Shown here: positions 13,694 to 56,556 of the stretch, one piece after another | Position numbering within the stretch: the first letter of the stretch is position 1 | Layout of the letters: the number at the start of each line of letters is the position of its first letter | The notes under the pieces: model-generated | The model's database searches: none | What the model was told of the DNA's origin: nothing | Seen by the model: only the letters and a program-made list of their open reading frames with translations | IMG/VR virus record: IMGVR_UViG_3300032675_000001 | Span: 296,684 to 360,683 of that record | DNA length: 64,000 bases | Direction: 5' to 3' (one strand) | Position numbers and translations under genes: made by a program

Positions 13694-14293
13694 ATGACTA
13701 TTTATTATGTATATTCTTATCTAAGAAAAGATGGAAGTCCATATTACATCGGCAAAGGCAAAGGCGGAAGAGCATACGACCACAATCATGTAGTTCCTCT
13801 ACCTAAAGATCGTAATAGGATAGTTTTCTTAGAAAGAAATCTAACCAATGTCGGTGCGTTAGCACTGGAACGAAGGTACATACGATGGTATGGACGAAAA
13901 GATTTAGGAACCGGTATATTACGCAATCGTACTGATGGCGGAGACGGATTCTACTCTCTAGTGAGAACTGATAAGCACAAAAAGAATATATCCACTTCAC
14001 TCACTGGCATAAAGCGAGTTCCTTTATCTGAACAACGAAAAGCACACTTAAGTAAAGTACTGACTGGTGTTTCAAAGCCAGCTTCAAGCCGCCCCGGAGA
14101 ACTCAATCCGTTTTATGGAGCGAAACATTCTGAAAAGACCTTACTCATTCAGAGAGAAGCAAAAATAGGCGAAAAGAACGGAATGTTTGGAAGAAAACAA
14201 AAACGTATAGTGTGTCCACACTGCGAAAAAGATACCTCAGTGAATGTTTATGCTGCGTACCACGGAGATAAATGCCGAAAAAAAGCTATTTAA
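13694..14293 (+). CDS. GIY-YIG homing endonuclease with NUMOD3-like repeats
   Basis: YYVYSY...PYYIGKG...R; NRTDGGDG; G..NPFYG.KH motifs; C-terminal CPHC. Confidence 0.9.
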
Positions 14294-43817: not shown

Positions 43818-45134
43818 TTATTTTTCTTCTAAATAATCCACACTTTCATCTACTTTTTCAGGCTTTTGGGCAACTACTTTTGGTGCTTCCGGTTCTGGGG
43901 ATTTTTTGCTATCAACCTGGTCCTGTAGAGCATTGACACGCTTCATGAGCAGATTGATTTCTTTATCTTGACGCTTATCATCTTCTTCTGAGTGCATGAT
44001 ACTGCGCATCACGAAGCGAAGGAATGCCTGTTGCTTTGATGGCGCTGAAGGATAATGTGTTCTTGCAAACGCAGCAGTCTTGTGAAATTCTGGGTGAGTA
44101 TACAGTCTCTCAAACTCATCATCACTGACTATGTTTCCTTTGTCGTGCTTTTCTTCTGGAAGAAATCTAATCTCTGATCCATTGATCAAATAGAATCCAT
44201 CACCTAAAGATTCCATAACATCTTCGTTTTTTGGCTTCTTGTGGTGCTTCTTCATATTGATGGCAATAGCGGCCTGTTGAGCGGCATTTGCTGCTTCTTC
44301 CACGCTTTCATTCGGAACACAGTTAGGAACAGTTTTGCCATTCTTCTTTTTATTTCCAACTGGCTTGTAGCCTTTCCAGCATGGGTTGGTGTTTTTTAAT
44401 GTCTTCTTAGCCTCGCTAAGTAGTTCAAAAAACTTTGCCTTCTGTTCAAGTGTTGCTTCACTTAATAGTGGCTTTATCTTATTAACCAACTCTCTCACAC
44501 TTTCGGTGATTTGCAAGTTATTGTCAAATGTTTGCTTCATGTGCTGAGCCGCATCACCATACAAATCGGTGAGGATTCTTAACTTAGTTCTATCATTGGC
44601 ACCAGCATATGCTTTGCGAATAGCACTTGCATCACGCATAGTCTTGCCAGCAATTGGAAACTCTTGAACATCCGTAGTCATAACATAAGCATGACCAGTT
44701 CCCGGTGTTCCTTTAGTCATTGGTTGCAGATTCAGAGTTGCTTCCTTGGTGAATGGCTGCATATAACTTGGCTGACCATTCTTTGTTGGCTTGAATGAAA
44801 AGCGAGCGTCCTCATTCATGTCCTTTCCACTCACACCAAATACCAATGCAGTCTTGGTAGGGTCCATTCCCTTGCTTTGAAGGTGATTGGCATATTCCAT
44901 TGCGTTATATGGATTGCGGACAATCAAAATGTTCTTTGCAGGAATACCCAAAGTCTTAGCCATTCTCGCACGATCTTCTGCCAAAAATGGGCTATCAGGT
45001 TGTTCCTGTTTTGCTGAAATGGCAAGCAGTGTATTAGGCAAGCCAAACTTTTCAGCAAGCTGTTTGAAACTTGCTGCATGTCCCTTATGAAATGGGTGGA
45101 AACGCCCAGGCATCACTGCAATTATATTTTTCAT
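43818..45134 (-). CDS. HIGH-family nucleotidyl(cytidylyl)transferase fused to extra modules
   Basis: PGRFHPFHKGH, ASAIR; then CWKGY...VPNCVP and EAANAAQQAAIAI.MKK modules. Confidence 0.8.
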   Translation of the reverse strand: MKNIIAVMPGRFHPFHKGHAASFKQLAEKFGLPNTLLAISAKQEQPDSPFLAEDRARMAKTLGIPAKNILIVRNPYNAMEYANHLQSKGMDPTKTALVFGVSGKDMNEDARFSFKPTKNGQPSYMQPFTKEATLNLQPMTKGTPGTGHAYVMTTDVQEFPIAGKTMRDASAIRKAYAGANDRTKLRILTDLYGDAAQHMKQTFDNNLQITESVRELVNKIKPLLSEATLEQKAKFFELLSEAKKTLKNTNPCWKGYKPVGNKKKNGKTVPNCVPNESVEEAANAAQQAAIAINMKKHHKKPKNEDVMESLGDGFYLINGSEIRFLPEEKHDKGNIVSDDEFERLYTHPEFHKTAAFARTHYPSAPSKQQAFLRFVMRSIMHSEEDDKRQDKEINLLMKRVNALQDQVDSKKSPEPEAPKVVAQKPEKVDESVDYLEEK

Positions 45135-45865
45135 GGTTTATCCTTACATTTGTCGCCATGGAATCTTGCATACATATTATTGGCAAATGATCTTTCGCAA
45201 TACTGGCATGTTGTTCTATGTTTTCGTGATCTCTCTAGACATGCTTCTAAATGGCGTTCCGGAACGCCATTTCTGTGCATCGGATTAATATATCCTTCTG
45301 AATTTGTCAATTCTTTAATCTTTTTACTGATTTTATTTTTAGTAGAATCTGTTATTGTTTGTTTGGATCGTTTTTCTCGCATTAAGATTTTGGTACTGTC
45401 AGTGTGCGTTTTGTTACTCATTCCTGTTGTTTTGCCACGTTTATCGATTGCATCTTGATGCTTAGTTTTCACGACCGGATCATACATTGGGTTGTTCAGA
45501 GTCATTCTCTGAGACATTTCTTTTTTCGCCAGTTCCATGACATAGGAATATGTTCTGCTGTTGGTTTTGTATCTCTCTGATTGATGTTTATTTCCAGAAT
45601 ATGTCATTCGTCTAATAGCATATATCATTTTACTTTTTGCTTGACCAGACGTAATTTTTGTTAACAAGCGATGACATATGAAATGTTCCTTAGGTGTTAA
45701 CTGGACTAAATTTTCCTTAGAGTTAGACCCCCCTAGTGATTTTGGAATAATATGATGAATTTCTGAATATCTATCTGGTGCCAATGTTCTTTTCTTGGCA
45801 AAAGATATGACACTATAATATACTGCAGTATATTTGTTGTTCAGAAATTCATCAAACATTTTCAT
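45131..45865 (-). CDS. HNH homing endonuclease
   Basis: EIHHIIPKSLGGSN...NLV.LT.KEHFI.H.LL; NUMOD3-like repeats. Confidence 0.9.
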   Translation of the reverse strand: MKMFDEFLNNKYTAVYYSVISFAKKRTLAPDRYSEIHHIIPKSLGGSNSKENLVQLTPKEHFICHRLLTKITSGQAKSKMIYAIRRMTYSGNKHQSERYKTNSRTYSYVMELAKKEMSQRMTLNNPMYDPVVKTKHQDAIDKRGKTTGMSNKTHTDSTKILMREKRSKQTITDSTKNKISKKIKELTNSEGYINPMHRNGVPERHLEACLERSRKHRTTCQYCERSFANNMYARFHGDKCKDKP

Positions 45866-46457: not shown

Positions 46458-47153
46458 TTAGTCTGGACGCTTTTCCAATTTGAAAGATTTACCAGTAATA
46501 TTAGGAAACAAAAGATGCATCATAGTCAACACTGATTCATTATTGTAATCAATTGTGCAGTTATCTCGCAACCAAATACGCTTGTATCCACTAGTAGACC
46601 TTAACCAGTTTTCAAGCGGAAGATTGCAATAAAGATCAGGAGTCCTTCTTACGTAGTCTAGAAGTTCTTCTCTAATCTCAAGTTCTACCCTCTTGTTCTT
46701 CAAATGCAATCTATACTTAAACTTTGGTTCTTTTGCAAAATACTTTACCCCAGCAGGCATGAGTTTAACTTCCGTGATTGTTGCAGCTTGGCTAATCTTT
46801 TTTACACCATCAAAAAGAGTAATGTCATTAGAAAAAAATGAAATGCTATCTCGTTCGTGTCGAGTTCCAGTATCAGGTTCGTTATTGAATTTCTTTTTGA
46901 ATGCTAGTATTTTTCCTAATTTTTTATACTCTGCTTCTGTCGGGTGAACAAATTCTGCTAACTGATACTTTTCCTTATTCAGTTCGTGAAACGTAGCATC
47001 ATATTCGATTCGTTCCCTTAATTCTTTTATGCTATTGCACCAGTACGCAAGATATAGAAACGGATGACTGATAGCAACTCTGTACTTATATTTGCTATAG
47101 TACAGAGTGCTACGTTGCTCAACCTTCAACTTCAATGATGCCATCTTCGCCAA
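46458..47153 (-). CDS. hypothetical protein (two internal KYKY/KFKY repeats)
   Basis: ORF overlapping clpA end. Confidence 0.7.
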   Translation of the reverse strand: MAKMASLKLKVEQRSTLYYSKYKYRVAISHPFLYLAYWCNSIKELRERIEYDATFHELNKEKYQLAEFVHPTEAEYKKLGKILAFKKKFNNEPDTGTRHERDSISFFSNDITLFDGVKKISQAATITEVKLMPAGVKYFAKEPKFKYRLHLKNKRVELEIREELLDYVRRTPDLYCNLPLENWLRSTSGYKRIWLRDNCTIDYNNESVLTMMHLLFPNITGKSFKLEKRPD

Positions 47154-49386
47154 CTCGTGCGGTTTGCTTTACGGTAACATCAAAGACAATCTGACCATCT
47201 TCCATGTTAGCCATGATGTTCGCATCCTTGATACGTTCAAAGAGAATCTTCTTTGAAAGCGGAACACGAATGAGTTCATCAATCTTACGACCAAGCGGAC
47301 GAGCACCCATCTTGGGATCATATCCCTTATCAGCAAGGTAATCAATCACAGGCTCACTCAGGTTAAGAGTGATATTGTGCTTTTCGTTGAGCGGCTTCTT
47401 CACATCTTCCAAGAACTTCACAACGATCTTCTTAATTGAAAGCGTATCCAACTTGTTGAACTTGCAGACAAGATCAAGACGATTACGGAACTCAGGCTTG
47501 AAGAACTGCTTCAGTGCCTTATCGTCTTCTCCGGTCTTTTCAAGATCACCAAAGCCGATATTGTTACGTTCATTGTCAGCCGAACCCAAGTTTGAAGTAA
47601 GAATGATGATCGTGTTCTTGCACGACACTTCCTTACCGTTGGAGCCAGTGATACGACCTTCATCAAGCATCTGCAAGAAGATGTTGAAAATATCAGGATG
47701 TGCCTTTTCAACTTCGTCAAACAGAAGAATAGAATGCGGGTTCTTGCTCAAGTCTGAAATCAAACGTCCACCTTGAACCTGTGAATCGCTGAAGCCAACA
47801 TAACCTGGGGGAGGACCGATCAAGCTGCTTACGCTGTGCTTCTCACTGTATTCCGACATGTCATACTTGTGAAGCGGCATATCCAAGTTCTTGGACAGCA
47901 ACTTTGCCAACTCTGTTTTACCAGTTCCCGTTGGACCCAAGAACAAGAAGCTCGCAATCGGCTTCTTTTCGTTACCGATCCCCGCAAACGAGACATATAC
48001 ACGCTCAAGAACATCGTTGACGGTCTTATCCTGACCATACAGCTTGTCCTTGACGTTTGCTTCAAGATTCTGAACACGATCCATGTTGTCTCCGCTAAGT
48101 TTATCAGCAGGTACACCAGTGAACTTTTCAACCTGTTCGTGAATCAACTTCTTAGTAATGATTGCTTCATCGTTGCCAAGAACCTTCTGCTTCGCACAAG
48201 CGGCATCAAGCAAGTCAATAGCCTTGTCAGGGTTCTTGCGATCATGAATATACCGGGCAGCACTATCAACAGCAGCTTCAACGGCTTCCTGAGTGATGTT
48301 CACATTATGGAAGTCATTCAATCGTGCAGACAGACCACTCAAAATGCGAATGGTAGAGTCGTGCGAAGGCTCGTCAATGCTGACGCGATAAAAACGGCGC
48401 ATCAAAGCACGGTCCTTCTCAAAAGACTCGTAAAACTCTTCCCACGTGGTAGAAGCAATGACCTTGAGAGTACCCTTAGTGATAGCAGGCTTGATCATGC
48501 TCGCAAAGTCAGGACCGCTGTTGCCAGCATTCCCTGCACCCTGCATAGTATGCGCTTCGTCAATGAAGAGAATCGCCTTCTTCTTGGCATTCAATGCTTC
48601 AAGAACGTTCTTGATCTTTTCCTCAAAGTCACCGCGATAACGCGAACCAGCCAGCAACGAACCAACTTCAAGCGAGTAAAGTTCATGGTCAAGCAAGAAG
48701 TCAGGAACTTCCTTGTTTACGATTGCCTGTGCAATACCTTCTGCGATTGCAGTCTTACCAACGCCCGGATCACCAACCATAAGCACGTTAGACTTGAAAC
48801 GCTTGGCGAGAACATTGACAATATCATCAATCTCAGTAGCACGACCGATCACCGGCTCAAGCTTTTCATCACGAGCAAGCTGAGTGAGATTGATAGTATA
48901 TTCTTCAAGGATTTCATCAGCCTGAGAATCACTGATGGTGCTGCTTGAAACTCCGCCCTTGTAGTTCTTTTCCCAATGACGAACAAAATCAGTCTTGGTG
49001 ATGCCGTACTTTAGCAAAAAGTAATGAGCATGTGAGTTGCCCTCACTTGCAATAGAAAGATACAGATCAATCGTGGTAACCTGACGGCGACCTGTAAAAA
49101 GAACCTGCGTAACTGAACGATTCATCACACGTTCAAGCGCATTAGTCTTGCGTGGATTGCAGTTTGGATCAGTGGATTCGATTGCATGAAGAGAGTTTAC
49201 ATATGCCTCAACTTCAGAAATCATAAGATCAGTGTCAACATTGAACTGATTCATGCACTTTTTGAACGGTGGGTGAGTGATCAGTGCCAGCAATAGATGC
49301 TCAATCGTGCAATACTGATGCTGACGAGTCTTTGCAGCCTCAACTGCGCGTTCAATAATATTTTCAATTTCAGGTGACGTTTGCAA
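47119..49386 (-). CDS. clpA: ATP-dependent Clp protease ATPase subunit
   Basis: Clp-N EHLLLAL; GDPGVGKT/FIDE; GPTGTGKT/FDEVEKAH; IGF-type loop (NIGFG); no ClpB middle domain. Confidence 0.93.
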   Translation of the reverse strand: MQTSPEIENIIERAVEAAKTRQHQYCTIEHLLLALITHPPFKKCMNQFNVDTDLMISEVEAYVNSLHAIESTDPNCNPRKTNALERVMNRSVTQVLFTGRRQVTTIDLYLSIASEGNSHAHYFLLKYGITKTDFVRHWEKNYKGGVSSSTISDSQADEILEEYTINLTQLARDEKLEPVIGRATEIDDIVNVLAKRFKSNVLMVGDPGVGKTAIAEGIAQAIVNKEVPDFLLDHELYSLEVGSLLAGSRYRGDFEEKIKNVLEALNAKKKAILFIDEAHTMQGAGNAGNSGPDFASMIKPAITKGTLKVIASTTWEEFYESFEKDRALMRRFYRVSIDEPSHDSTIRILSGLSARLNDFHNVNITQEAVEAAVDSAARYIHDRKNPDKAIDLLDAACAKQKVLGNDEAIITKKLIHEQVEKFTGVPADKLSGDNMDRVQNLEANVKDKLYGQDKTVNDVLERVYVSFAGIGNEKKPIASFLFLGPTGTGKTELAKLLSKNLDMPLHKYDMSEYSEKHSVSSLIGPPPGYVGFSDSQVQGGRLISDLSKNPHSILLFDEVEKAHPDIFNIFLQMLDEGRITGSNGKEVSCKNTIIILTSNLGSADNERNNIGFGDLEKTGEDDKALKQFFKPEFRNRLDLVCKFNKLDTLSIKKIVVKFLEDVKKPLNEKHNITLNLSEPVIDYLADKGYDPKMGARPLGRKIDELIRVPLSKKILFERIKDANIMANMEDGQIVFDVTVKQTARVGEDGIIEVEG

Positions 49387-49397
49387 TTTTAAATCCT

Positions 49398-50186
49398 TTA
49401 GGTAGTTTGGTTACGCTTGATACTTTCAATGACATCAATGCTTACATTATCAGGAATGAATGGTTTTAGCAAGAGAATTTGATCACCATATTGCCCATTT
49501 TGCATAGGCATACCGTAACCGGGCAGTCTAATTTGCTGATACGGTTGGGTTTTTTCATGAATTTTCACTTCAATTTTTTTTCCACCAATCGTGTCAACTT
49601 CTACCACAGTTCCGACGATAAGATCGAGAACTGAAATAGAAAGATTTGAGTAAAGATCGTATCCTTTACGATCAAAACGCAAATCTGGCATAACGATAAA
49701 CTCTACCAAGAGAGTTGCATCGTCAATGACACCTTCATAACGTATTTGGCTACCAGAGTCAACACCTTTTGGTACCTTGATGGTGATGAGTTTTGTTCCG
49801 TTAGGCGTATTGGCCTGTAGGAAGTGTTCTGCACCATTGTATGCGTCAATGAGTGAGACTGTCACTCTAGTTCTGTATGTAGGCTTTTGTGGCTGTCTCT
49901 GATGCATGTTTTGACCAAAAACCTGACTGAACAGACTATCAATATCAAAACCATTGACATTAAAGTTGAATCCACCCGGCATTCCGTTAAACTGTGGTTG
50001 CGGGTTATCATATTGTGACTTTTTAGCAGGGTCGCTTAATGTTTCGTATGCCGTGCTAATTTCTTGAAATTTTGCTAGATCACCACCCTTATCAGGATGA
50101 TGCTGCATTGCTAGTTTACGATATGCTTTTTTGATTTCTTCTGGGGAAGCATCTCGCGATACTCCCAGTGTGTTATAATGATCCAT
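49398..50186 (-). CDS. dnaJ: DnaJ-class co-chaperone (type II/CbpA-like)
   Basis: J-domain with HPD, G/F region, C-terminal domain, no zinc finger; start may be 50186 or 50192. Confidence 0.9.
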
Positions 50187-50221
50187 TTTCATATCCTAAC
50201 ACACTGGGAGTTGAATGTCAA
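50161..50221 (-). promoter_or_regulatory. sigma70 promoter overlapping a perfect 15-bp inverted repeat around the dnaJ start
   Basis: TTGACA-N17-TAGGAT; arms 50161-50175 and 50197-50211. Confidence 0.75.
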
Positions 50222-50225
50222 TATA

Positions 50226-51218
50226 TTAGTGGAATCCACCAAGTCCTGAACTGCCCGGTAACCCACTGGCACCCGGCAAGCCGCCACTCATACCTAAGCC
50301 ACCTGACATGCCACTTGTGTTAGCCAATCCAGTTGGAGCAGGAGGTGCTGGCGGAGCGATTCCTACTGGTGCAGGAGTTGCTGTTGAATTAGTAGATACA
50401 CCCTGAATCTTTTCTTGAGTACGACCATATGCTGCAATACCAAGAACGGCACCCATCGCAACGTGGAACAATCCAGCGCCCTGTAAAGTAAGCGGTTGCC
50501 ACTGTACATTTACTGCGCCGTGAAAGATTGCCTGTACGATTGACCAAAGAATAGGAGCAATAACAAAGTCAAATACGCAAACGCCCATATACATCCAGCC
50601 CATAACTGGACGCCACTTTTTGTTGATCCAGTCTTCGTTGGTATTGGCTACTAGAACATCAGCACCTTGTGCAGCATTATTTCCTGCGCTGGTCATGTTC
50701 CCCTGAACGACTACGCCCATGCCCATCTGGCCACCCATTTGACCGCCCATGCCTCCAGACATACCGCCCATGCCCATGCCTCCAGACATACCGCCCATGC
50801 CCATGCCTCCAGACATACCGCCCATGCCCATGCCGCCCATACCACTGCCTTGCGTGACACCGACTCCCACGGACATCCCGCTGCCCATGCTGCTTCCGAA
50901 CCCACTACTAGATGGTGGATTTGTTTGATTGGCCGCTACATTCATTTGTTGCATGTGTTGCAACATATCCGGATCGTTAGTGAGTGATGCAACATGCTCA
51001 TCATTTTTACCAACGATTTGCATGTGCTCATCATTATCTTTTGTTGCTAATGCAGCAGGTTCGGATGATGGCTTAGGTGCGGTGTCTTCATCGTCATCTG
51101 GCTGACCATCATCGTCTCCGTCTGTTTGACTTGGCATCGGAGCACTCTGAGGTGGAACACCCTGAGTTGGGTCAGTTGTACCTGGAATTCCTTGTGTCGC
51201 GTCCTGTGTGTCATCCAT
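50226..51218 (-). CDS. 3TM-holin-like membrane protein with long low-complexity termini
   Basis: WINKKWRP.MGW.Y...C.FDF...P; WQPLTLQG.GLFH.AMGAVLG...GRT.EK. Confidence 0.7.
   Translation of the reverse strand: MDDTQDATQGIPGTTDPTQGVPPQSAPMPSQTDGDDDGQPDDDEDTAPKPSSEPAALATKDNDEHMQIVGKNDEHVASLTNDPDMLQHMQQMNVAANQTNPPSSSGFGSSMGSGMSVGVGVTQGSGMGGMGMGGMSGGMGMGGMSGGMGMGGMSGGMGGQMGGQMGMGVVVQGNMTSAGNNAAQGADVLVANTNEDWINKKWRPVMGWMYMGVCVFDFVIAPILWSIVQAIFHGAVNVQWQPLTLQGAGLFHVAMGAVLGIAAYGRTQEKIQGVSTNSTATPAPVGIAPPAPPAPTGLANTSGMSGGLGMSGGLPGASGLPGSSGLGGFH
50745..50834. repeat. 27-bp tandem repeat x3.3 (GGMGMGGMS)
   Basis: gcccatgcctccagacataccgcccat repeated perfectly. Confidence 0.9.
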
Positions 51219-51221
51219 AAA

Positions 51222-51764
51222 TTACATTCCTGCCATTGCTTTTAAGTTCTTGATGTATTCATCGTTATTGTGGCCCGCAGTTACCGGTTCAATCCCAGCA
51301 CGTTTGCGAACTTCATTTAATTCTTCGTCAGTTTCATGGGCTTCTTTGTACTCACCGGGATTCAGAATCATTTTACTTCCGATTATTTCAGGGTCTGCAT
51401 CATAACCTTCATTGTCAATCTCAACTGTCCAGTCTTTTAACTTATACCCAGTTAATGTTTGTAAATCAGATAATAGTCTGCAAATTCTTTCAGGTACTTT
51501 CGTTCTGCGTTCCATTTCAACGAATACCAGATATTTTCCCGGCTCGATTTCACCGTCACTAATACTTGCGTCTAATACAAAATCATATCCTCTCTCAAAC
51601 CAAGAGACTAAATCTTGACCGGCAAGTTCCGAATATACTGTAAAAGCAAGAGTTACTATAGCAGCATCGCTTCCCATTTTTGCAGCATATTCATCGACAG
51701 ATACCTTATCACCCATCTGCCCTTCCATGTCCATATAATCTAGGTTTTCGTTAAGAATAGCCAT
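51222..51764 (-). CDS. conserved-type late hypothetical protein
   Basis: DE...KMG.D...F......DLV.W.E.GY.FVLDA..S.GE...Y.VFVE. Confidence 0.75.
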   Translation of the reverse strand: MAILNENLDYMDMEGQMGDKVSVDEYAAKMGSDAAIVTLAFTVYSELAGQDLVSWFERGYDFVLDASISDGEIEPGKYLVFVEMERRTKVPERICRLLSDLQTLTGYKLKDWTVEIDNEGYDADPEIIGSKMILNPGEYKEAHETDEELNEVRKRAGIEPVTAGHNNDEYIKNLKAMAGM

Positions 51765-51766
51765 AG

Positions 51767-52378
51767 TTAACCCTGTGGTGCAGCGGAAGGTGGCATTGCT
51801 GCTTGTTGAGCCATTGGTTGATTTTGGTCTTGCATTGTTTCTGCACCGTGTTCTTGACTGTCCATTTCATCAAGGTCTTCGTTGTATGCATCTTCAATGT
51901 CTGAAAGGTCAATAGTTTGATCAGCAAGATCAATTGATCCTTCTTTGATGTCATTCATGAGTTCAATTGGAATCTTGATTTCAACAAACCAAACTTTGCG
52001 TTTTTTCATTTTTGGATATCTGGTTCCCGGAACAAAATCTTCATAGTCTTGTACTTCTACAGGAACTTCAAGTTCTGACTTTCCAAATGTTACTTTGCAT
52101 CCAATCGCATCCAATCTCAGTGCGCCTCGTGGATCAGGCATCAACTTGTAAGGCCACATGAAAGTACATTTGCAAGAATATCTGCCGACAACTGGACCAT
52201 CTACAAGTTCACCAATGAGCCAATTTTTGTATGCGTACAGGTCTGCTTCGTCCAATACTCGCTCAAAGTCAAGTAAGGTGGACATGGAGCCATCGCTCAT
52301 GTAAACGTTCTTAATCGTATCAACAATGCTTACGAAGTTAACGTCATTAAAGAATTTATCTGCTGGTAAACTAGTCAT
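51767..52378 (-). CDS. conserved-type late hypothetical protein
   Basis: L.DFERVLD..DLY.Y.NW..GELV.GP...MPDP.G..RL; TAAATA-N5-ATG. Confidence 0.75.
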   Translation of the reverse strand: MTSLPADKFFNDVNFVSIVDTIKNVYMSDGSMSTLLDFERVLDEADLYAYKNWLIGELVDGPVVGRYSCKCTFMWPYKLMPDPRGALRLDAIGCKVTFGKSELEVPVEVQDYEDFVPGTRYPKMKKRKVWFVEIKIPIELMNDIKEGSIDLADQTIDLSDIEDAYNEDLDEMDSQEHGAETMQDQNQPMAQQAAMPPSAAPQG

Positions 52379-52559
52379 ACGAGTATTTATCTTTTTAGGA
52401 CTATTGCAAGGAATTCGGTAGAATTCTTGCAGCGTAGATTAGTATTTATCCCGTGAAACTATTTTACTGTTGCTGATAGTTTACACATTCTGAATATCTA
52501 AGTATCTATGAGAGCAAGTTGTGCTTCTCAATAACGGTGTATCAGATTAGGAGAATCAT

Positions 52560-53940: not shown

Positions 53941-54870
53941 TCATATAGTAGTTAATTCGCAAAGTGTTGCTGCCATACTGATTTCGGGAATACCAACGAG
54001 CGGCAGATTTGCTAGCCCATTACGAATAGTAATGATAGCAGCATCCTTTTTCTCGGTAGTGTTGCCCCATAGATCAAGATTGTCATACATCCATCGGTAA
54101 CAGTCTTCAATACGAGTAGGATACAGTGAAATGTATTGCAACAACTGCTGGCGACCTTCAAGAATCTTCCCAGACTTAAAAAGTTCTGTAGCAGCAACAA
54201 GAAGTTCATCTTCTCCACTACCGGTTGACTGCGGTTTGTTCAGTGTTCCACTCGTGGAGTTCTGTTGCAACTGATTAAGACACTTGCGTAGATCAGGATA
54301 TGAACTACGCACATATGTATCAAGATCATCCAAATCAAACTCAATCCCCTCATTGAGCAACACAGTGGCTGCACGAGTGGTGAAGTCAGTCATGTCTGGT
54401 TTAGCAATATGAAACTTGTAGCAGCGGCTTTCACGCAATGCCGCAATGATCTTATGCTCATAGTTGCAAGTAAGAATATAACGCACCGTGTCAGCATATG
54501 CTTCCATATCATTACGAAGTGCCGCCTGTGATGCCTGTGTCAAGTAGTCTGCTTCGTCTAGCAAAACTACCTTGAACTTACCGAATGGCATAGTCTGCAC
54601 GAAGCCATTGATCTTGTCGCGTAGGAAATCAATGCCGTTTTCTCTGGAAGCATTGATTTCAAGAACATCATATTCTTCTACGTCAAGTGCCTTAATAAGG
54701 ACTTTAGCGAGTGTAGTTTTGCCAGTGCCGGGATCACCAGATAGAAGCAGGTGTGGAATAGTTCCTTCTTGAATCCAATGTTCTACTTGCTTCTTCTGAT
54801 TCTCATTAACAAATACATATTCATCAATAGATACAGGTCTATACTTCTCAACCCAAAGTTGATTTTTCAT
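53941..54870 (-). CDS. clamp loader AAA+ subunit (gp44/RFC-like)
   Basis: LWVEKYRP, GDPGTGKTT, INAS, LDEAD, SRC. Confidence 0.93.
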   Translation of the reverse strand: MKNQLWVEKYRPVSIDEYVFVNENQKKQVEHWIQEGTIPHLLLSGDPGTGKTTLAKVLIKALDVEEYDVLEINASRENGIDFLRDKINGFVQTMPFGKFKVVLLDEADYLTQASQAALRNDMEAYADTVRYILTCNYEHKIIAALRESRCYKFHIAKPDMTDFTTRAATVLLNEGIEFDLDDLDTYVRSSYPDLRKCLNQLQQNSTSGTLNKPQSTGSGEDELLVAATELFKSGKILEGRQQLLQYISLYPTRIEDCYRWMYDNLDLWGNTTEKKDAAIITIRNGLANLPLVGIPEISMAATLCELTTI

Positions 54871-55765: not shown

Positions 55766-56272
55766 TTACTTCAAAAACTCATGTATGGAGAGGTCATAAT
55801 AGAGTGAGTTTATTTTGTGTATCCCGATTAGATATAGCACAAAACTACTGACACTGGAACCACGACCAACGCCCCATACGATGTTGTGCTTACGCATAGT
55901 GTCAACGAGATATTTAAGATACCTTAGGAGCATGAACATGTCGCGTTCTTGATAGAGCAAAAGTTCTTCCCCTGCTCTTTGTAATTCTGCTTCATCTGCA
56001 CATTGATCTAATACGAATTTTGCGATATCAAAGTCACGATATTCGTCAGGAATAAACCATCTGTTTCTTAGTTCTTCGTCAAACTCTTTAACAGTTTGTG
56101 AGCTTGGTTCATATTGTATTAGATGGGGAATTTTCTGCAAGTCTAGACCGACATCAAACTTAATCTGCTCTGCAACGAGAACATTCTTAAGTTCAATGTC
56201 GGGGTTGGTTAGATATAGATCACATAGGTCTTGCTCTGTGTATATCTGTTGACCAAACTTATCTGTAAGCAT
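55766..56272 (-). CDS. stand-alone fragment homologous to DNA polymerase III alpha (DnaE)
   Basis: R..EEL.....LVD......WGVGRGSSV.S.VLYLIG.H.I..L.Y.L...EFL. Confidence 0.8.
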   Translation of the reverse strand: MLTDKFGQQIYTEQDLCDLYLTNPDIELKNVLVAEQIKFDVGLDLQKIPHLIQYEPSSQTVKEFDEELRNRWFIPDEYRDFDIAKFVLDQCADEAELQRAGEELLLYQERDMFMLLRYLKYLVDTMRKHNIVWGVGRGSSVSSFVLYLIGIHKINSLYYDLSIHEFLK

Positions 56273-56274
56273 TC

Positions 56275-56556
56275 TTATACTATAACACGCTCTTCGTGAA
56301 TTGTCAAGCCATAAGCTTTTGCAATATGCATATGGTATTCAACTGCCTCTTCCCAATTGCGGTGACGAGCGATAACTTCGCTGTCTTCTTTGGTAAACAG
56401 ACAGCTTTCAAAATTATAATCTACAGGATGGTACAGCGTCCCATCAAGACACGACAGTTCCACAGTAGATAACCATTTCTGACTATCACGAAGGATATCA
56501 AACAGATCATCATTTTTACTGACGATTTGCCGCCTCTGTTGGATTTGGTAGGTCAT
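56275..56556 (-). CDS. hypothetical protein
   Basis: STV.L...FES..F......R...WEEA...H. Confidence 0.7.
   Translation of the reverse strand: MTYQIQQRRQIVSKNDDLFDILRDSQKWLSTVELSCLDGTLYHPVDYNFESCLFTKEDSEVIARHRNWEEAVEYHMHIAKAYGLTIHEERVIV

What the first reader, a model, noticed from the sequence alone, without database searches (positions are those of the whole stretch)
50161..50221. Perfect 15-bp inverted repeat that cages the dnaJ start only in read-through transcripts
Seen: ACTCCCAGTGTGTTA (50161-50175, inside the coding region) is perfectly complementary to 50197-50211 (the promoter spacer). The 21-nt loop holds both candidate ATGs. Inference: transcripts from the local sigma70 promoter start at ~50186 and lack the 5' arm, so they are translatable. 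Late read-through mRNA from the upstream holin-like operon folds the hairpin and would silence dnaJ, or act as a thermosensor. This is a temporal switch similar in logic to T4 RBS-sequestering hairpins but inverted (early on, late off).
Basis: partly seen in the sequence, partly recalled or inferred. Interest (0 to 1): 0.6.

Follow-up and report, generated by a model that had tools for sequence, protein, structure and literature searches.

The report
Promoter-straddling hairpin caging leaderless dnaJ start
In a 360-kb freshwater jumbo phage, a conserved RNA hairpin straddles the start site of the dnaJ gene's own promoter, so it can fold only in transcripts arriving from the upstream late operon, where it would lock the start codon; this is a reversed, leaderless version of a trick known from phage T4.

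Summary
The 15-bp perfect inverted repeat is real (50161-50175 / 50197-50211, 21-nt loop). It is far beyond chance and unique in the genome.

All genes here are on the minus strand. In mRNA sense the 5' arm lies in the spacer and extended -10 of a sigma70-type promoter. The 3' arm is codons Y-N-T-L-G-V of dnaJ. The predicted +1 is the A of the second ATG (50186), so the local transcript is leaderless and lacks the 5' arm.

Sixteen related phage contigs form one clade that keeps the helix. It shows about ten independent compensatory changes between non-coding spacer bases and synonymous codon positions. A 4-bp inner helix leaves AUG in a 7-nt loop.

Genome-wide, about 10 sigma70-type and 18 gp55-type ([AC]TAAATA) promoters sit at leaderless distance from an ATG. 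At least three other genes have hairpins with the 5' arm in a promoter spacer and the 3' arm on or beside the Shine-Dalgarno sequence.

The upstream three-gene operon carries late-type promoters and no terminator, so read-through is expected.

The thermosensor idea is rejected: -27 kcal/mol, still folded at 75 C. This is a new variant of the T4 e/soc/49/I-TevI mechanism.

The parts
50197..50211 (-). 5' arm of the RNA hairpin (ACUCCCAGUGUGUUA). It lies in the promoter spacer, the extended -10 TG (50201-50200) and the first two bases of the -10 hexamer.
   Evidence: Covaries with the 3' arm in alignment A1, columns 22-36.
50161..50175 (-). 3' arm (UAACACACUGGGAGU), at +12..+26 of the predicted transcript. 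It covers the last base of Tyr4 through Val9 of DnaJ (Y-N-T-L-G-V of the J domain).
   Evidence: Variation sits at synonymous or V/I positions and is matched by changes in the 5' arm.
50176..50196 (-). 21-nt loop holding the rest of the -10 hexamer (GGAU), ATGAAA and the start codon. An inner 4-bp helix (50192-50189 AUGA with 50181-50178 UCAU) leaves a 7-nt apical loop AAAUGGA (50188-50182).
   Evidence: RNAfold. The inner helix forms in 13 of 15 relatives that keep the outer helix, against 3 of 28 that lack it.
50193..50221 (-). Sigma70-type promoter: -35 TTGACA 50221-50216, 17-nt spacer, TG 50201-50200, -10 TAGGAT 50198-50193. Predicted +1 is A50186.
   Evidence: 10 of 12 matches, TG present. 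The -35, the TG and the TA of the -10 are invariant in 17 relatives. Nine other genes of the genome share the -10-N6-ATG geometry, or N7 in one case.
49398..50186 (-). dnaJ-like gene of 262 aa counted from the second ATG. It has a J domain and a DnaJ_C domain and no zinc finger. Its mRNA is predicted to be leaderless.
   Evidence: Pfam PF00226 and PF01556. Relatives start with MDHY and gene callers give 262 aa.
50141..50168 (-). Alternative hairpin of the leaderless transcript (+19..+46, -14.4 kcal/mol). It reuses CUGGGAG of the 3' arm and leaves nt 1-18 unpaired.
   Evidence: A hairpin at this position appears in 89% of 45 relatives with leaderless geometry.
50226..52378 (-). Upstream three-gene operon: two virion structural protein homologues (51767-52378 and 51222-51764) and a Gly/Met-rich GTA_holin_3TM-like protein (50226-51218). 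Its stop codon TAA is at 50228-50226, 4 nt before the -35 of the dnaJ promoter.
   Evidence: The same gene order is found in relatives.
52384..52390 (-). ATAAATA late-type (T4 gp55-type) promoter motif, 5 nt before the ATG of the first operon gene. A second copy lies at 52449-52443.
   Evidence: It is the top enriched upstream 7-mer. It is carried by terminase, structural and head genes. The genome encodes a gp55-like late sigma factor.
47119..49386 (-). ClpA/B-like two-ring AAA+ ATPase directly after dnaJ. It has its own Shine-Dalgarno sequence (AAGGA) and a TTG start.

Best explanation
The element is an RNA stem-loop that works as a filter on transcript origin for dnaJ.

SHOWN from sequence:
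- A conserved sigma70-type promoter with an extended -10 sits so that its 5' half forms the 5' arm of the hairpin.
- The predicted +1 is the A of the dnaJ start codon.
- The 3' arm lies at +12..+26 inside the coding region.

INFERRED:
- Transcripts started by host RNA polymerase at this promoter are leaderless (5'-AUGGAUCAU...). They lack the 5' arm, keep their first 18 nt single-stranded, and are translated by the leaderless route.
- Transcripts that start at the gp55-type late promoters about 2.2 kb upstream run through the two structural genes and the holin-like gene without a terminator. They contain both arms.
- In those transcripts a 15-bp stem plus a 4-bp inner helix (-27 kcal/mol) closes around the AUG. 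The AUG is then internal, has no conserved Shine-Dalgarno sequence, and sits in a 7-nt loop. Initiation or re-initiation on dnaJ is blocked.

Net effect: DnaJ is made from the early-type promoter only.

The hairpin may also protect the 3' end of the late operon's mRNA; the two roles are compatible.
For: 1. Structure under selection.
- In 17 aligned relatives, 86.4% of cells pair, against 27-45% when the partner is slid.
- 25 cells are changed on both sides, against 10.0 +/- 2.4 in shuffles (0 of 500 shuffles reach it).
- 7 pairs show compensatory change. One position shows UA, AU, CG and GU; another shows GC, AU, UA and CG.
- RNAalifold finds the same helix independently.
- On a DnaJ tree built without the hairpin codons, the hairpin bearers form one clade (support 100/98). 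Sister taxa differ by double changes, so about ten independent compensations are implied.
- The changes pair non-coding spacer bases with synonymous codon positions.

2. RNA in the sense strand. In the 8 strongly folding members, every non-Watson-Crick pair in the helix core is G.U (8 cases). A.C occurs only at the loop-proximal pairs 13 and 15.

3. Caging of the AUG. The inner helix (-6..-3 with +6..+9) co-occurs with the outer helix: 3.27 of 4 pairs on average, against 1.07 of 4 without it.

4. Start site between the arms.
- The -35, TG and TA elements are invariant in relatives.
- Across the genome, the distance from the -10 to the ATG is bimodal: 6 nt in 9 genes including dnaJ, 7 nt in one, then none until 20 nt or more.

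5. Recurrent design.
- Other hairpins in the genome (47020-47064, 220472-220506, 286601-286638) have TTGACA immediately 5' of the arm and a -10-like hexamer at the 5'-arm/loop junction.
- At the first two sites the 3' arm lies on the Shine-Dalgarno sequence. At the third, the SD directly follows the 3' arm.
- The first is kept with compensatory change in relatives of 89-91% identity.

6. Read-through is plausible.
- ATAAATA motifs lie at 52390-84 and 52449-43.
- The operon genes are separated by only 2-3 nt.
- No terminator-like site above background lies on the minus strand before dnaJ.
- The genome uses canonical U-tract terminators elsewhere.

7. Promoter classes.
- [AC]TAAATA precedes the terminase, structural and head genes.
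- TTGACA-type promoters precede the exonuclease, dNMP kinase, DNA polymerase piece and clamp loader genes.
- The genome encodes a gp55-like late sigma factor: phrog_12791, E = 3e-74.

8. Precedent. In T4, genes e, soc, 49 and I-TevI use a hairpin whose 5' strand lies upstream of an internal promoter (PMC3014915).
Against: - No transcript data exist. No RNA run was listed, so start sites, read-through and timing are all inferred from motifs.
- Read-through RNA has no conserved Shine-Dalgarno sequence before dnaJ in most relatives. Translation would be poor even without a hairpin, which weakens the need for a translational block.
- The hairpin is not universal. It has decayed in several members of its own clade (L175, L213, L199, L204, L169). 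It is absent from the sister clade, which has the same leaderless promoter.
- The other eight or nine leaderless sigma70-type genes of this genome have no such hairpin.
- The excess of G.U over A.C across all members is modest (25 to 16), and the sequences are not independent.
Confidence: 0.55

Rival explanations
1. The hairpin serves the upstream late operon rather than dnaJ. It would be a 3'-end barrier against exonucleases, or a terminator without a U-tract that depends on a factor or on the polymerase. It would overlap dnaJ only because the intergenic space is 33 nt.
For: - The hairpin begins 14 nt after the upstream stop codon.
- In distant relatives the same position holds a hairpin followed by T6 that overlaps the dnaJ promoter.
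- Relatives of another gene carry a terminator-like hairpin over the -35.
- The outcome is the same as in the main model: read-through does not express dnaJ.
Against: - There is no U-tract after the stem in any member (AUCGCG, UUUCUCG or UUCCACG), although the genome uses canonical U-tract terminators elsewhere.
- A 3' barrier has no need for an inner helix that closes on the AUG, yet that helix co-varies with the outer stem.
- The analogous hairpins elsewhere in the genome place their 3' arm on or next to a Shine-Dalgarno sequence, not after a stop codon.
Confidence: 0.2
2. The stem is a processing site for RNase III or a similar double-strand nuclease. Cleavage would separate the late mRNA from dnaJ-clp and destroy the dnaJ start in read-through RNA.
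For: The perfect 15-bp stem plus the 4-bp extension comes close to the length that RNase III accepts (my own knowledge). The result would again be late silencing.
Against: - Stems in relatives are often 12-14 bp with mismatches and G.U pairs.
- No conserved internal-loop or box features were seen.
- There is no Rfam match.
Confidence: 0.07
3. The repeat acts in the DNA. It would be an operator for a dimeric repressor, or a cruciform, overlapping the promoter, as CIRCE and HAIR repeats do at bacterial chaperone genes.
For: - It overlaps a promoter of a chaperone gene.
- In distant relatives a palindrome of conserved sequence (GGTATAGTA-N5-TACTATACC) sits at the same promoter, once per locus.
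Against: - The arms change in sequence between close relatives while staying complementary. An operator would keep its sequence.
- The half-site centres are 36 bp apart.
- The helix tolerates G.U but not A.C in its core, which fits sense-strand RNA.
- A 21-nt loop disfavours cruciform extrusion (my own knowledge).
Confidence: 0.05
4. The hairpin is an RNA thermometer that opens the dnaJ start at high temperature.
For: dnaJ is a heat-shock gene in bacteria.
Against: - Predicted stability is -26.9 kcal/mol at 37 C.
- The mean pairing probability of the 15 pairs is 0.95 at 65 C and 0.91 at 75 C.
- The phage comes from lake water.
- Known thermometers use weak, mismatched stems (my own knowledge).
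Confidence: 0.02
5. There is no function. A quasi-palindrome is kept complementary by templated (strand-switch) mutation.
For: Strand-switch mutation can make imperfect inverted repeats perfect without selection (my own knowledge). The hairpin has decayed in several lineages.
Against: - About ten independent compensations are spread over a deep clade.
- The inner helix is co-conserved with the outer stem.
- The same design recurs with unrelated sequences at other promoters.
Confidence: 0.05

Closest known systems
T4 genes e (lysozyme), soc, 49 and I-TevI, and Aeh1 mobE: inhibitory hairpins at the translation initiation region, with an internal promoter
   Same: - A hairpin covers the translation initiation region.
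- The DNA for its 5' strand lies upstream of a promoter next to the gene, so only transcripts from further upstream fold it and stay untranslated.
- Locally started transcripts are translated (PMC3014915).
- This genome also has T4-like late promoters and a gp55-like sigma factor.
   Different: - Polarity is reversed. Here the internal promoter is sigma70-type (early class) and the read-through comes from a late operon.
- The local mRNA is leaderless, so no Shine-Dalgarno sequence is sequestered.
- The AUG sits in a small loop, and the 3' arm lies inside the coding region.
- Pairing is kept through synonymous sites.
Leaderless mRNAs, such as lambda cI from P_RM (my own knowledge)
   Same: The -10 hexamer is placed so that +1 is the A of the AUG, with no Shine-Dalgarno sequence.
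   Different: Here it is a whole class of about 28 predicted genes under two promoter types in one phage, inferred from geometry only. phiKZ dRNA-seq found no leaderless phage transcripts (PMC8244752).
PeSL composite promoter-terminator cassettes of T4-like phages
   Same: A stem-loop is combined with an early-type promoter between genes (PMC4122927).
   Different: - PeSLs are dispersed repeats with a terminator function and are implicated in recombination.
- This hairpin is unique in the genome.
- It has no U-tract, and its 3' arm is coding.
Rho-independent terminators
   Same: A stable stem-loop directly after an operon.
   Different: There is no U-tract, the loop is 21 nt, and the 3' arm lies inside the next gene.

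Membership tests
T4-type promoter-inside-hairpin translational control (e, soc, 49, I-TevI) | A stable RNA helix that involves the translation initiation region (SD and/or AUG) | tested here: met
   The 15-bp and 4-bp helices pair -25..-11 with +12..+26 and -6..-3 with +6..+9. The AUG sits in a 7-nt loop. Stability is -26.9 kcal/mol. Covariation supports the helix. There is no SD to sequester.
T4-type promoter-inside-hairpin translational control (e, soc, 49, I-TevI) | A promoter placed so that its start site falls between the two arms | tested here: met
   The conserved TTGACA-N17-TG-TAGGAT promoter puts +1 at 50186, inside the loop. This is predicted from sequence, not mapped.
T4-type promoter-inside-hairpin translational control (e, soc, 49, I-TevI) | Longer transcripts from an upstream promoter of another temporal class run through the site | tested here: inconclusive
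   Late-type motifs lie at 52390-84 and 52449-43, genes are tightly packed, and no terminator-like site exceeds background. No RNA data exist.
T4-type promoter-inside-hairpin translational control (e, soc, 49, I-TevI) | The long transcript is translated much less than the short one | not testable with these tools
   Needs reporters or toeprinting.
Leaderless mRNA | The transcript 5' end lies at, or within a few nt of, the A of the start codon, with no SD | tested here: inconclusive
   The geometry -10 + 6 nt + ATG is shared by 9 genes including dnaJ (7 nt in one more), with no promoter-like site at 8-19 nt. All dnaJ relatives of the clade keep 5-6 nt. No 5'-end data exist.
Rho-independent terminator | A GC-rich stem with a short loop followed by a U-tract | tested here: not met
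   The loop is 21 nt. The tail is AUCGCGAG, with no U-tract in relatives either. The terminator scan does not list it.
RNA thermometer (ROSE, fourU type) | A marginally stable structure that melts within the physiological temperature range | tested here: not met
   Predicted to be paired at 0.95 probability at 65 C. No Rfam hit.
PeSL promoter-terminator cassette | A conserved motif repeated at many intergenic sites of the genome | tested here: not met
   The arm sequence occurs only at this hairpin, with 0-1 mismatch, in 360 kb.
Protein operator palindrome (CIRCE or HAIR type) | Half-site sequence conserved among relatives | tested here: not met
   Six of the 15 positions change on both arms between relatives while pairing is kept.

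The most novel reading that the evidence does not exclude
This clade of freshwater jumbo phages may run a general post-transcriptional insulation system.
- A sizeable share of its genes (about 28 of 400) are expressed as leaderless mRNAs from both host-type and gp55-type promoters.
- Hairpins that straddle transcription start sites act as filters on transcript origin, in place of terminators in a tightly packed genome.
- At dnaJ the filter is a two-state switch. The segment CUGGGAG pairs upstream in late read-through RNA, which cages the AUG. It pairs downstream in the early leaderless RNA, which frees the 5' AUG.
- The result is an early-on, late-off pattern that has not been described for the T4 paradigm.
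Probability: 0.35. Interest if true: 0.7.

Novelty: new variant of a known kind. Interest (0 to 1): 0.55.

Why it matters
If confirmed, three things follow.

First, the T4 idea of a promoter inside an inhibitory hairpin would be a general and reversible design. It would be usable to switch a gene off late as well as on late, and it would work on leaderless mRNAs that have no Shine-Dalgarno sequence to hide.

Second, it would provide a clean natural example of RNA pairing maintained between a promoter spacer and synonymous codon positions. This is useful for annotating regulatory structure in uncultured phage genomes.

Third, it points to a jumbo phage lineage with many predicted leaderless genes. 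That says something about how its unknown host translates, and it offers testable parts: a promoter, a start-site geometry and a hairpin.

It also suggests that the phage chaperone pair DnaJ and ClpA/B-like ATPase is wanted early. DnaJ at least would not be made late; the clp gene has its own Shine-Dalgarno sequence and may still be translated from read-through RNA.

Tried and rejected
- RNA evidence: the look-up of sequencing runs listed no RNA run holding the stretch. Read laying was therefore not used, and start sites remain predictions.
- Known RNA families: an Rfam scan of 49900-50500 gave only a sub-threshold chance hit elsewhere.
- Cultured relatives: blastn against 50,697 phage records hit only the J-domain coding part of two uncultured huge phages.
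- Thermosensor: rejected by predicted melting.
- Intrinsic terminator: no U-tract, and not listed by the scan.
- Dispersed cassette (PeSL-like): the arm is unique in the genome.
- DNA operator: the arms co-vary instead of being conserved.
- First ATG (50192) as the start: rejected. It would leave no room between the -10 and +1. Several relatives lack it (CTGAGA, TTGAGA, GTAACA). It forms the inner helix AUGA.
- Strict scan for other perfect spacer-to-downstream stems at TTGAC-N16-18-TAnnnT promoters: only dnaJ (15 bp) and one 8-bp case exceed the random control. The other examples have weaker -10 matches and came from the inverted-repeat list instead.
- Wobble asymmetry over all 17 sequences is only 25 G.U to 16 A.C. 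I use it as supporting evidence only.
- A first Markov-chain simulation timed out and was replaced by mononucleotide shuffles.
- The large profile search, structure prediction and complex prediction were not needed and were not run.

Full report
**Observation.** The inverted repeat is exactly as described: 50161-50175 and 50197-50211, 15 nt, fully complementary, 21 nt apart. The 15-mer has no other copy in the window, even with two mismatches. It has no other copy in the whole genome with 0-1 mismatch. The genome is a single 360,683-bp contig with 41% G+C. IMG/VR classes it as a complete virus record with direct terminal repeats. In this genome, perfect inverted repeats with loops up to 40 nt are strongly enriched. 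There are 31 of 11 bp or more against 3.6 in shuffles, and 3 of 15 bp or more against none. The minus-strand RNA folds at -40.2 kcal/mol over 121 nt (z = -5.0). The hairpin alone folds at -26.9 kcal/mol.

**Anatomy.** Nearly all genes of the window are on the minus strand. Read 5'->3' on that strand, the order is:
- TAA of the upstream gene (50228-50226);
- 4 nt;
- TTGACA (50221-50216);
- a 17-nt spacer ending in TGT;
- TAGGAT (50198-50193);
- ATGAAA;
- ATG (50186-50184).

The 5' arm of the hairpin (50211-50197) is the spacer, the extended -10 TG and the TA of the -10 hexamer. The 3' arm (50175-50161) is the last base of Tyr4 through Val9 (Y-N-T-L-G-V) of a DnaJ-like protein. That protein has a J domain and a DnaJ_C domain and no zinc finger. 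A 4-bp inner helix (AUGA 50192-50189 with UCAU 50181-50178) leaves the start codon in a 7-nt loop.

Downstream lies a ClpA/B-like ATPase with its own SD and a TTG start. Upstream lie two virion structural protein homologues and a Gly/Met-rich GTA_holin_3TM-like protein, separated by 2-3 nt.

**The promoter and the leaderless start.** In all relatives of the near clades, three features are kept in an otherwise variable intergenic stretch: the -35 TTGAC(A/T), the TG, and the TA of the -10. The -10 ends 5-6 nt before the ATG that begins MDHY. None of them has a Shine-Dalgarno sequence. The AGGA of the window is simply its -10 hexamer.

Across the genome, 29 TTGAC-N16-18-TAnnn(T/A) sites lie upstream of genes. 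The distance from the -10 to the ATG is 6 nt in nine genes (dnaJ counted from its second ATG) and 7 nt in one. It is then never between 8 and 19 nt, and is 20 nt or more in the rest, which do have AGGAG-like SDs. By the usual sigma70 geometry (my own knowledge), a 6-nt gap puts +1 on the A of the ATG. So dnaJ belongs to a class of predicted leaderless genes, and its start is 50186, not 50192.

A second promoter class shows the same pattern. [AC]TAAATA is the most enriched 7-mer upstream of genes (64 observed, 5.2 expected). Its distance to the ATG is 3-5 nt in 18 genes (12 of them at 5 nt) or 17 nt and more in most of the rest; six lie at 8-14 nt.

This motif precedes the terminase large subunit, virion structural and head morphogenesis genes. 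The sigma70-type promoters precede an exonuclease, a dNMP kinase, a DNA polymerase piece and the clamp loader. The genome encodes a homologue of the T4 late sigma factor gp55 (E = 1.5e-6 to T4 gp55; phrog_12791, E = 3e-74). I therefore read TTGACA-type promoters as early or host-type, and [AC]TAAATA as gp55-type late. This is an inference from gene functions and from the T4 consensus TATAAATA.

**Is the helix selected?**
- Protein and DNA searches gave 219 related loci. In the register of the window, the 15 pairs are kept at 12-15 of 15 in about a dozen distinct sequences. Background elsewhere is 3-11 of 15.
- On a 17-sequence alignment, 86.4% of cells pair, against 27-45% when the 3' partner is slid by 1-3 columns. 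Twenty-five cells are changed on both sides, against 10.0 +/- 2.4 in shuffles (0 of 500). Seven pairs show compensatory change.
- RNAalifold predicts the same helix.
- A DnaJ tree built without the first 28 residues places the hairpin bearers in one clade (support 100/98). Sisters differ by double changes: the window against L161 at pairs 6 and 8; L166 against L169 at pairs 3 and 6; L172 against L175 at pairs 3 and 9.
- All variable 3'-arm positions are synonymous or Val/Ile first positions, and the spacer follows them.
- In the eight strongly folding members, every non-Watson-Crick pair in the core is G.U. This fits sense-strand RNA rather than duplex DNA or antisense RNA.
- The loop-proximal pairs 11-15 are invariant because they are both the TGnTA of the promoter and codons TAT-AAC-AC. 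They carry no information about pairing.
- The inner helix around the AUG goes with the outer helix: 13 of 15 against 3 of 28.
- The structure has decayed in some lineages (L175, L213, L199, L204, L169). It is absent from the sister clade, which keeps the leaderless promoter.

**The two transcripts.** An RNA starting at 50186 is predicted to keep nt 1-18 unpaired. It forms a different hairpin at +19..+46 that reuses CUGGGAG of the 3' arm. A hairpin at that place is seen in 89% of 45 relatives with leaderless geometry. An RNA coming from upstream forms the 15-bp stem with probability above 0.97.

The upstream operon has ATAAATA motifs at 52390-52384 (5 nt before its first ATG) and at 52449-52443. 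No terminator-like site above shuffle expectation lies on the minus strand before dnaJ. The genome does use canonical hairpin-plus-U-tract terminators elsewhere.

The ribosome that stops at TAA 50228-50226 is 14 nt from the stem, too far to melt it (my own knowledge of the ribosome footprint).

**A recurrent design.** The longest inverted repeats with large loops include several hairpins, unrelated in sequence, built the same way. TTGACA lies directly 5' of the 5' arm, and a -10-like hexamer sits at the 5'-arm/loop junction (genome 47020-47064, 220472-220506, 286601-286638). At the first two sites the 3' arm covers the SD. At the third the SD directly follows the 3' arm. Two further hairpins have GATAAATA in the loop and the SD in the 3' arm (13698-13735, 240403-240451), which is the classical T4 arrangement.

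The first of these is kept, with a compensatory GUGUG/CACAC to GUCGG/CGAUA change, in relatives of 89-91% identity. More distant relatives instead have a terminator-like hairpin over the -35.

**Interpretation.** The hairpin can form only in transcripts that start upstream of the dnaJ promoter, and there it blocks initiation at dnaJ. The local, leaderless transcript is translatable.

This is the logic documented for T4 e, soc, 49 and I-TevI (PMC3014915), with three differences:
- the internal promoter is of the early class and the read-through is late;
- the gene is leaderless, so the AUG is caged rather than an SD being sequestered;
- one arm is coding sequence.

The thermosensor idea fails on stability. 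A role as a 3'-end barrier or unconventional terminator for the late operon cannot be excluded and may coexist. It explains the inner helix and the SD-covering analogues less well.

The main weakness of the translational reading is that read-through RNA lacks an SD anyway. The main weakness of everything here is the absence of RNA data.

**Comparison and novelty.** This is not a PeSL, because it is unique rather than dispersed. It is not an intrinsic terminator, a thermometer or a conserved operator (see the membership table). I file it as a new variant of the T4 promoter-in-hairpin mechanism, well supported structurally and untested functionally.

Noticed in passing
window 56272-56307 (-), and genome-wide (G000:C1): A class of predicted leaderless genes. 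TTGACA-N17-TAnnnT sits 6 nt before the ATG at nine genes including dnaJ, and 7 nt before it at one more. An example in the window is the DNA-polymerase-piece gene 55766-56272: -35 at 56307-56302, TATAGT at 56284-56279. No promoter-like site lies 8-19 nt from an ATG.
   Followed up: partly
window 52384-52390 and 52443-52449 (-); genome-wide: [AC]TAAATA is the dominant upstream motif (64 genes against 5.2 expected). It resembles the T4 late promoter. It sits 3-5 nt before the ATG at 18 genes, which are therefore also predicted leaderless, or 17 nt and more at most other genes, which have an SD. It precedes the terminase, structural and head genes.
   Followed up: partly
G000:C1:155692-156585 (+) = L311:913-1806: A 297-aa homologue of the T4 late sigma factor gp55 (phrog_12791, E = 3e-74). 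Together with a gp44-like clamp loader at window 53941-54870, it suggests T4-style late transcription in a 360-kb phage.
   Followed up: partly
G000:C1:47020-47064 (-), 220472-220506 (+), 286601-286638 (-), 177854-177892 (+): Other hairpins, unrelated in sequence, with the same layout. The 5' arm lies in a TTGACA promoter spacer, or on the -10 itself at 177854. The 3' arm lies on the Shine-Dalgarno sequence (47020, 220472), just before it (286601) or just before the ATG (177854). The first is conserved, with compensatory change, in relatives of 89-91% identity.
   Followed up: partly
G000:C1:13698-13735 (-) and 240403-240451 (+): Two hairpins (11 and 17 bp) with GATAAATA in the loop and the SD in the 3' arm. 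This is the classical T4 gene-e arrangement, with a late promoter inside an RBS-sequestering hairpin.
   Followed up: no
L016-L064, L120-L160 and others; for example L016:2416-2438: In distant DnaJ relatives (about 40% identity), a palindrome of conserved sequence, GGTATAGTA-N5-TACTATACC followed by T6, overlaps the -10 of the dnaJ promoter. It occurs once per locus. It is either a promoter-overlapping terminator or an operator. Its sequence conservation is unexplained.
   Followed up: partly
window 50141-50168 (-); L002, L009, L096 and others at +17..+49 of dnaJ: A hairpin inside codons 6-16 of the J domain. Gly-Val codons pair with Thr/Ser-Pro codons, with matching third positions. It is present in 89% of relatives with the leaderless promoter. 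It is strongest (-13 to -22 kcal/mol) in the clade that lacks the promoter-straddling hairpin.
   Followed up: partly
G000:C1:214996-215051 (+): A 17-bp perfect hairpin whose 3' arm is the ATG and the first five codons of a 280-aa gene. The SD lies in the 22-nt loop. No clear internal promoter was seen.
   Followed up: no
L170:1292-1330 and L171: A close relative has one extra T in the run just after the 3' arm (GTTTTCTCG against GTTTCTCG). This shifts the dnaJ frame, so the gene was called from a later start (242 aa). It may be an assembly error or a real frameshift.
   Followed up: no
window 45131-45865 (-); L163, L165, L169: An HNH homing-endonuclease gene lies two genes downstream of the clp gene. 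In several relatives the clp gene is called in pieces (364, 551 + 214, and 463 aa). The cause was not examined; L165 has a run of N upstream of dnaJ.
   Followed up: no
window 50226-51218 (-): The holin-like protein is 330 aa in the window and 296-330 aa in its nearest relatives, but 163-189 aa in more distant ones. The extra length is a Gly/Met-rich repeat (GMGGMSGG...) and an acidic N-terminal part. The long plus-strand ORFs over it are likely artefacts of the repeat.
   Followed up: no
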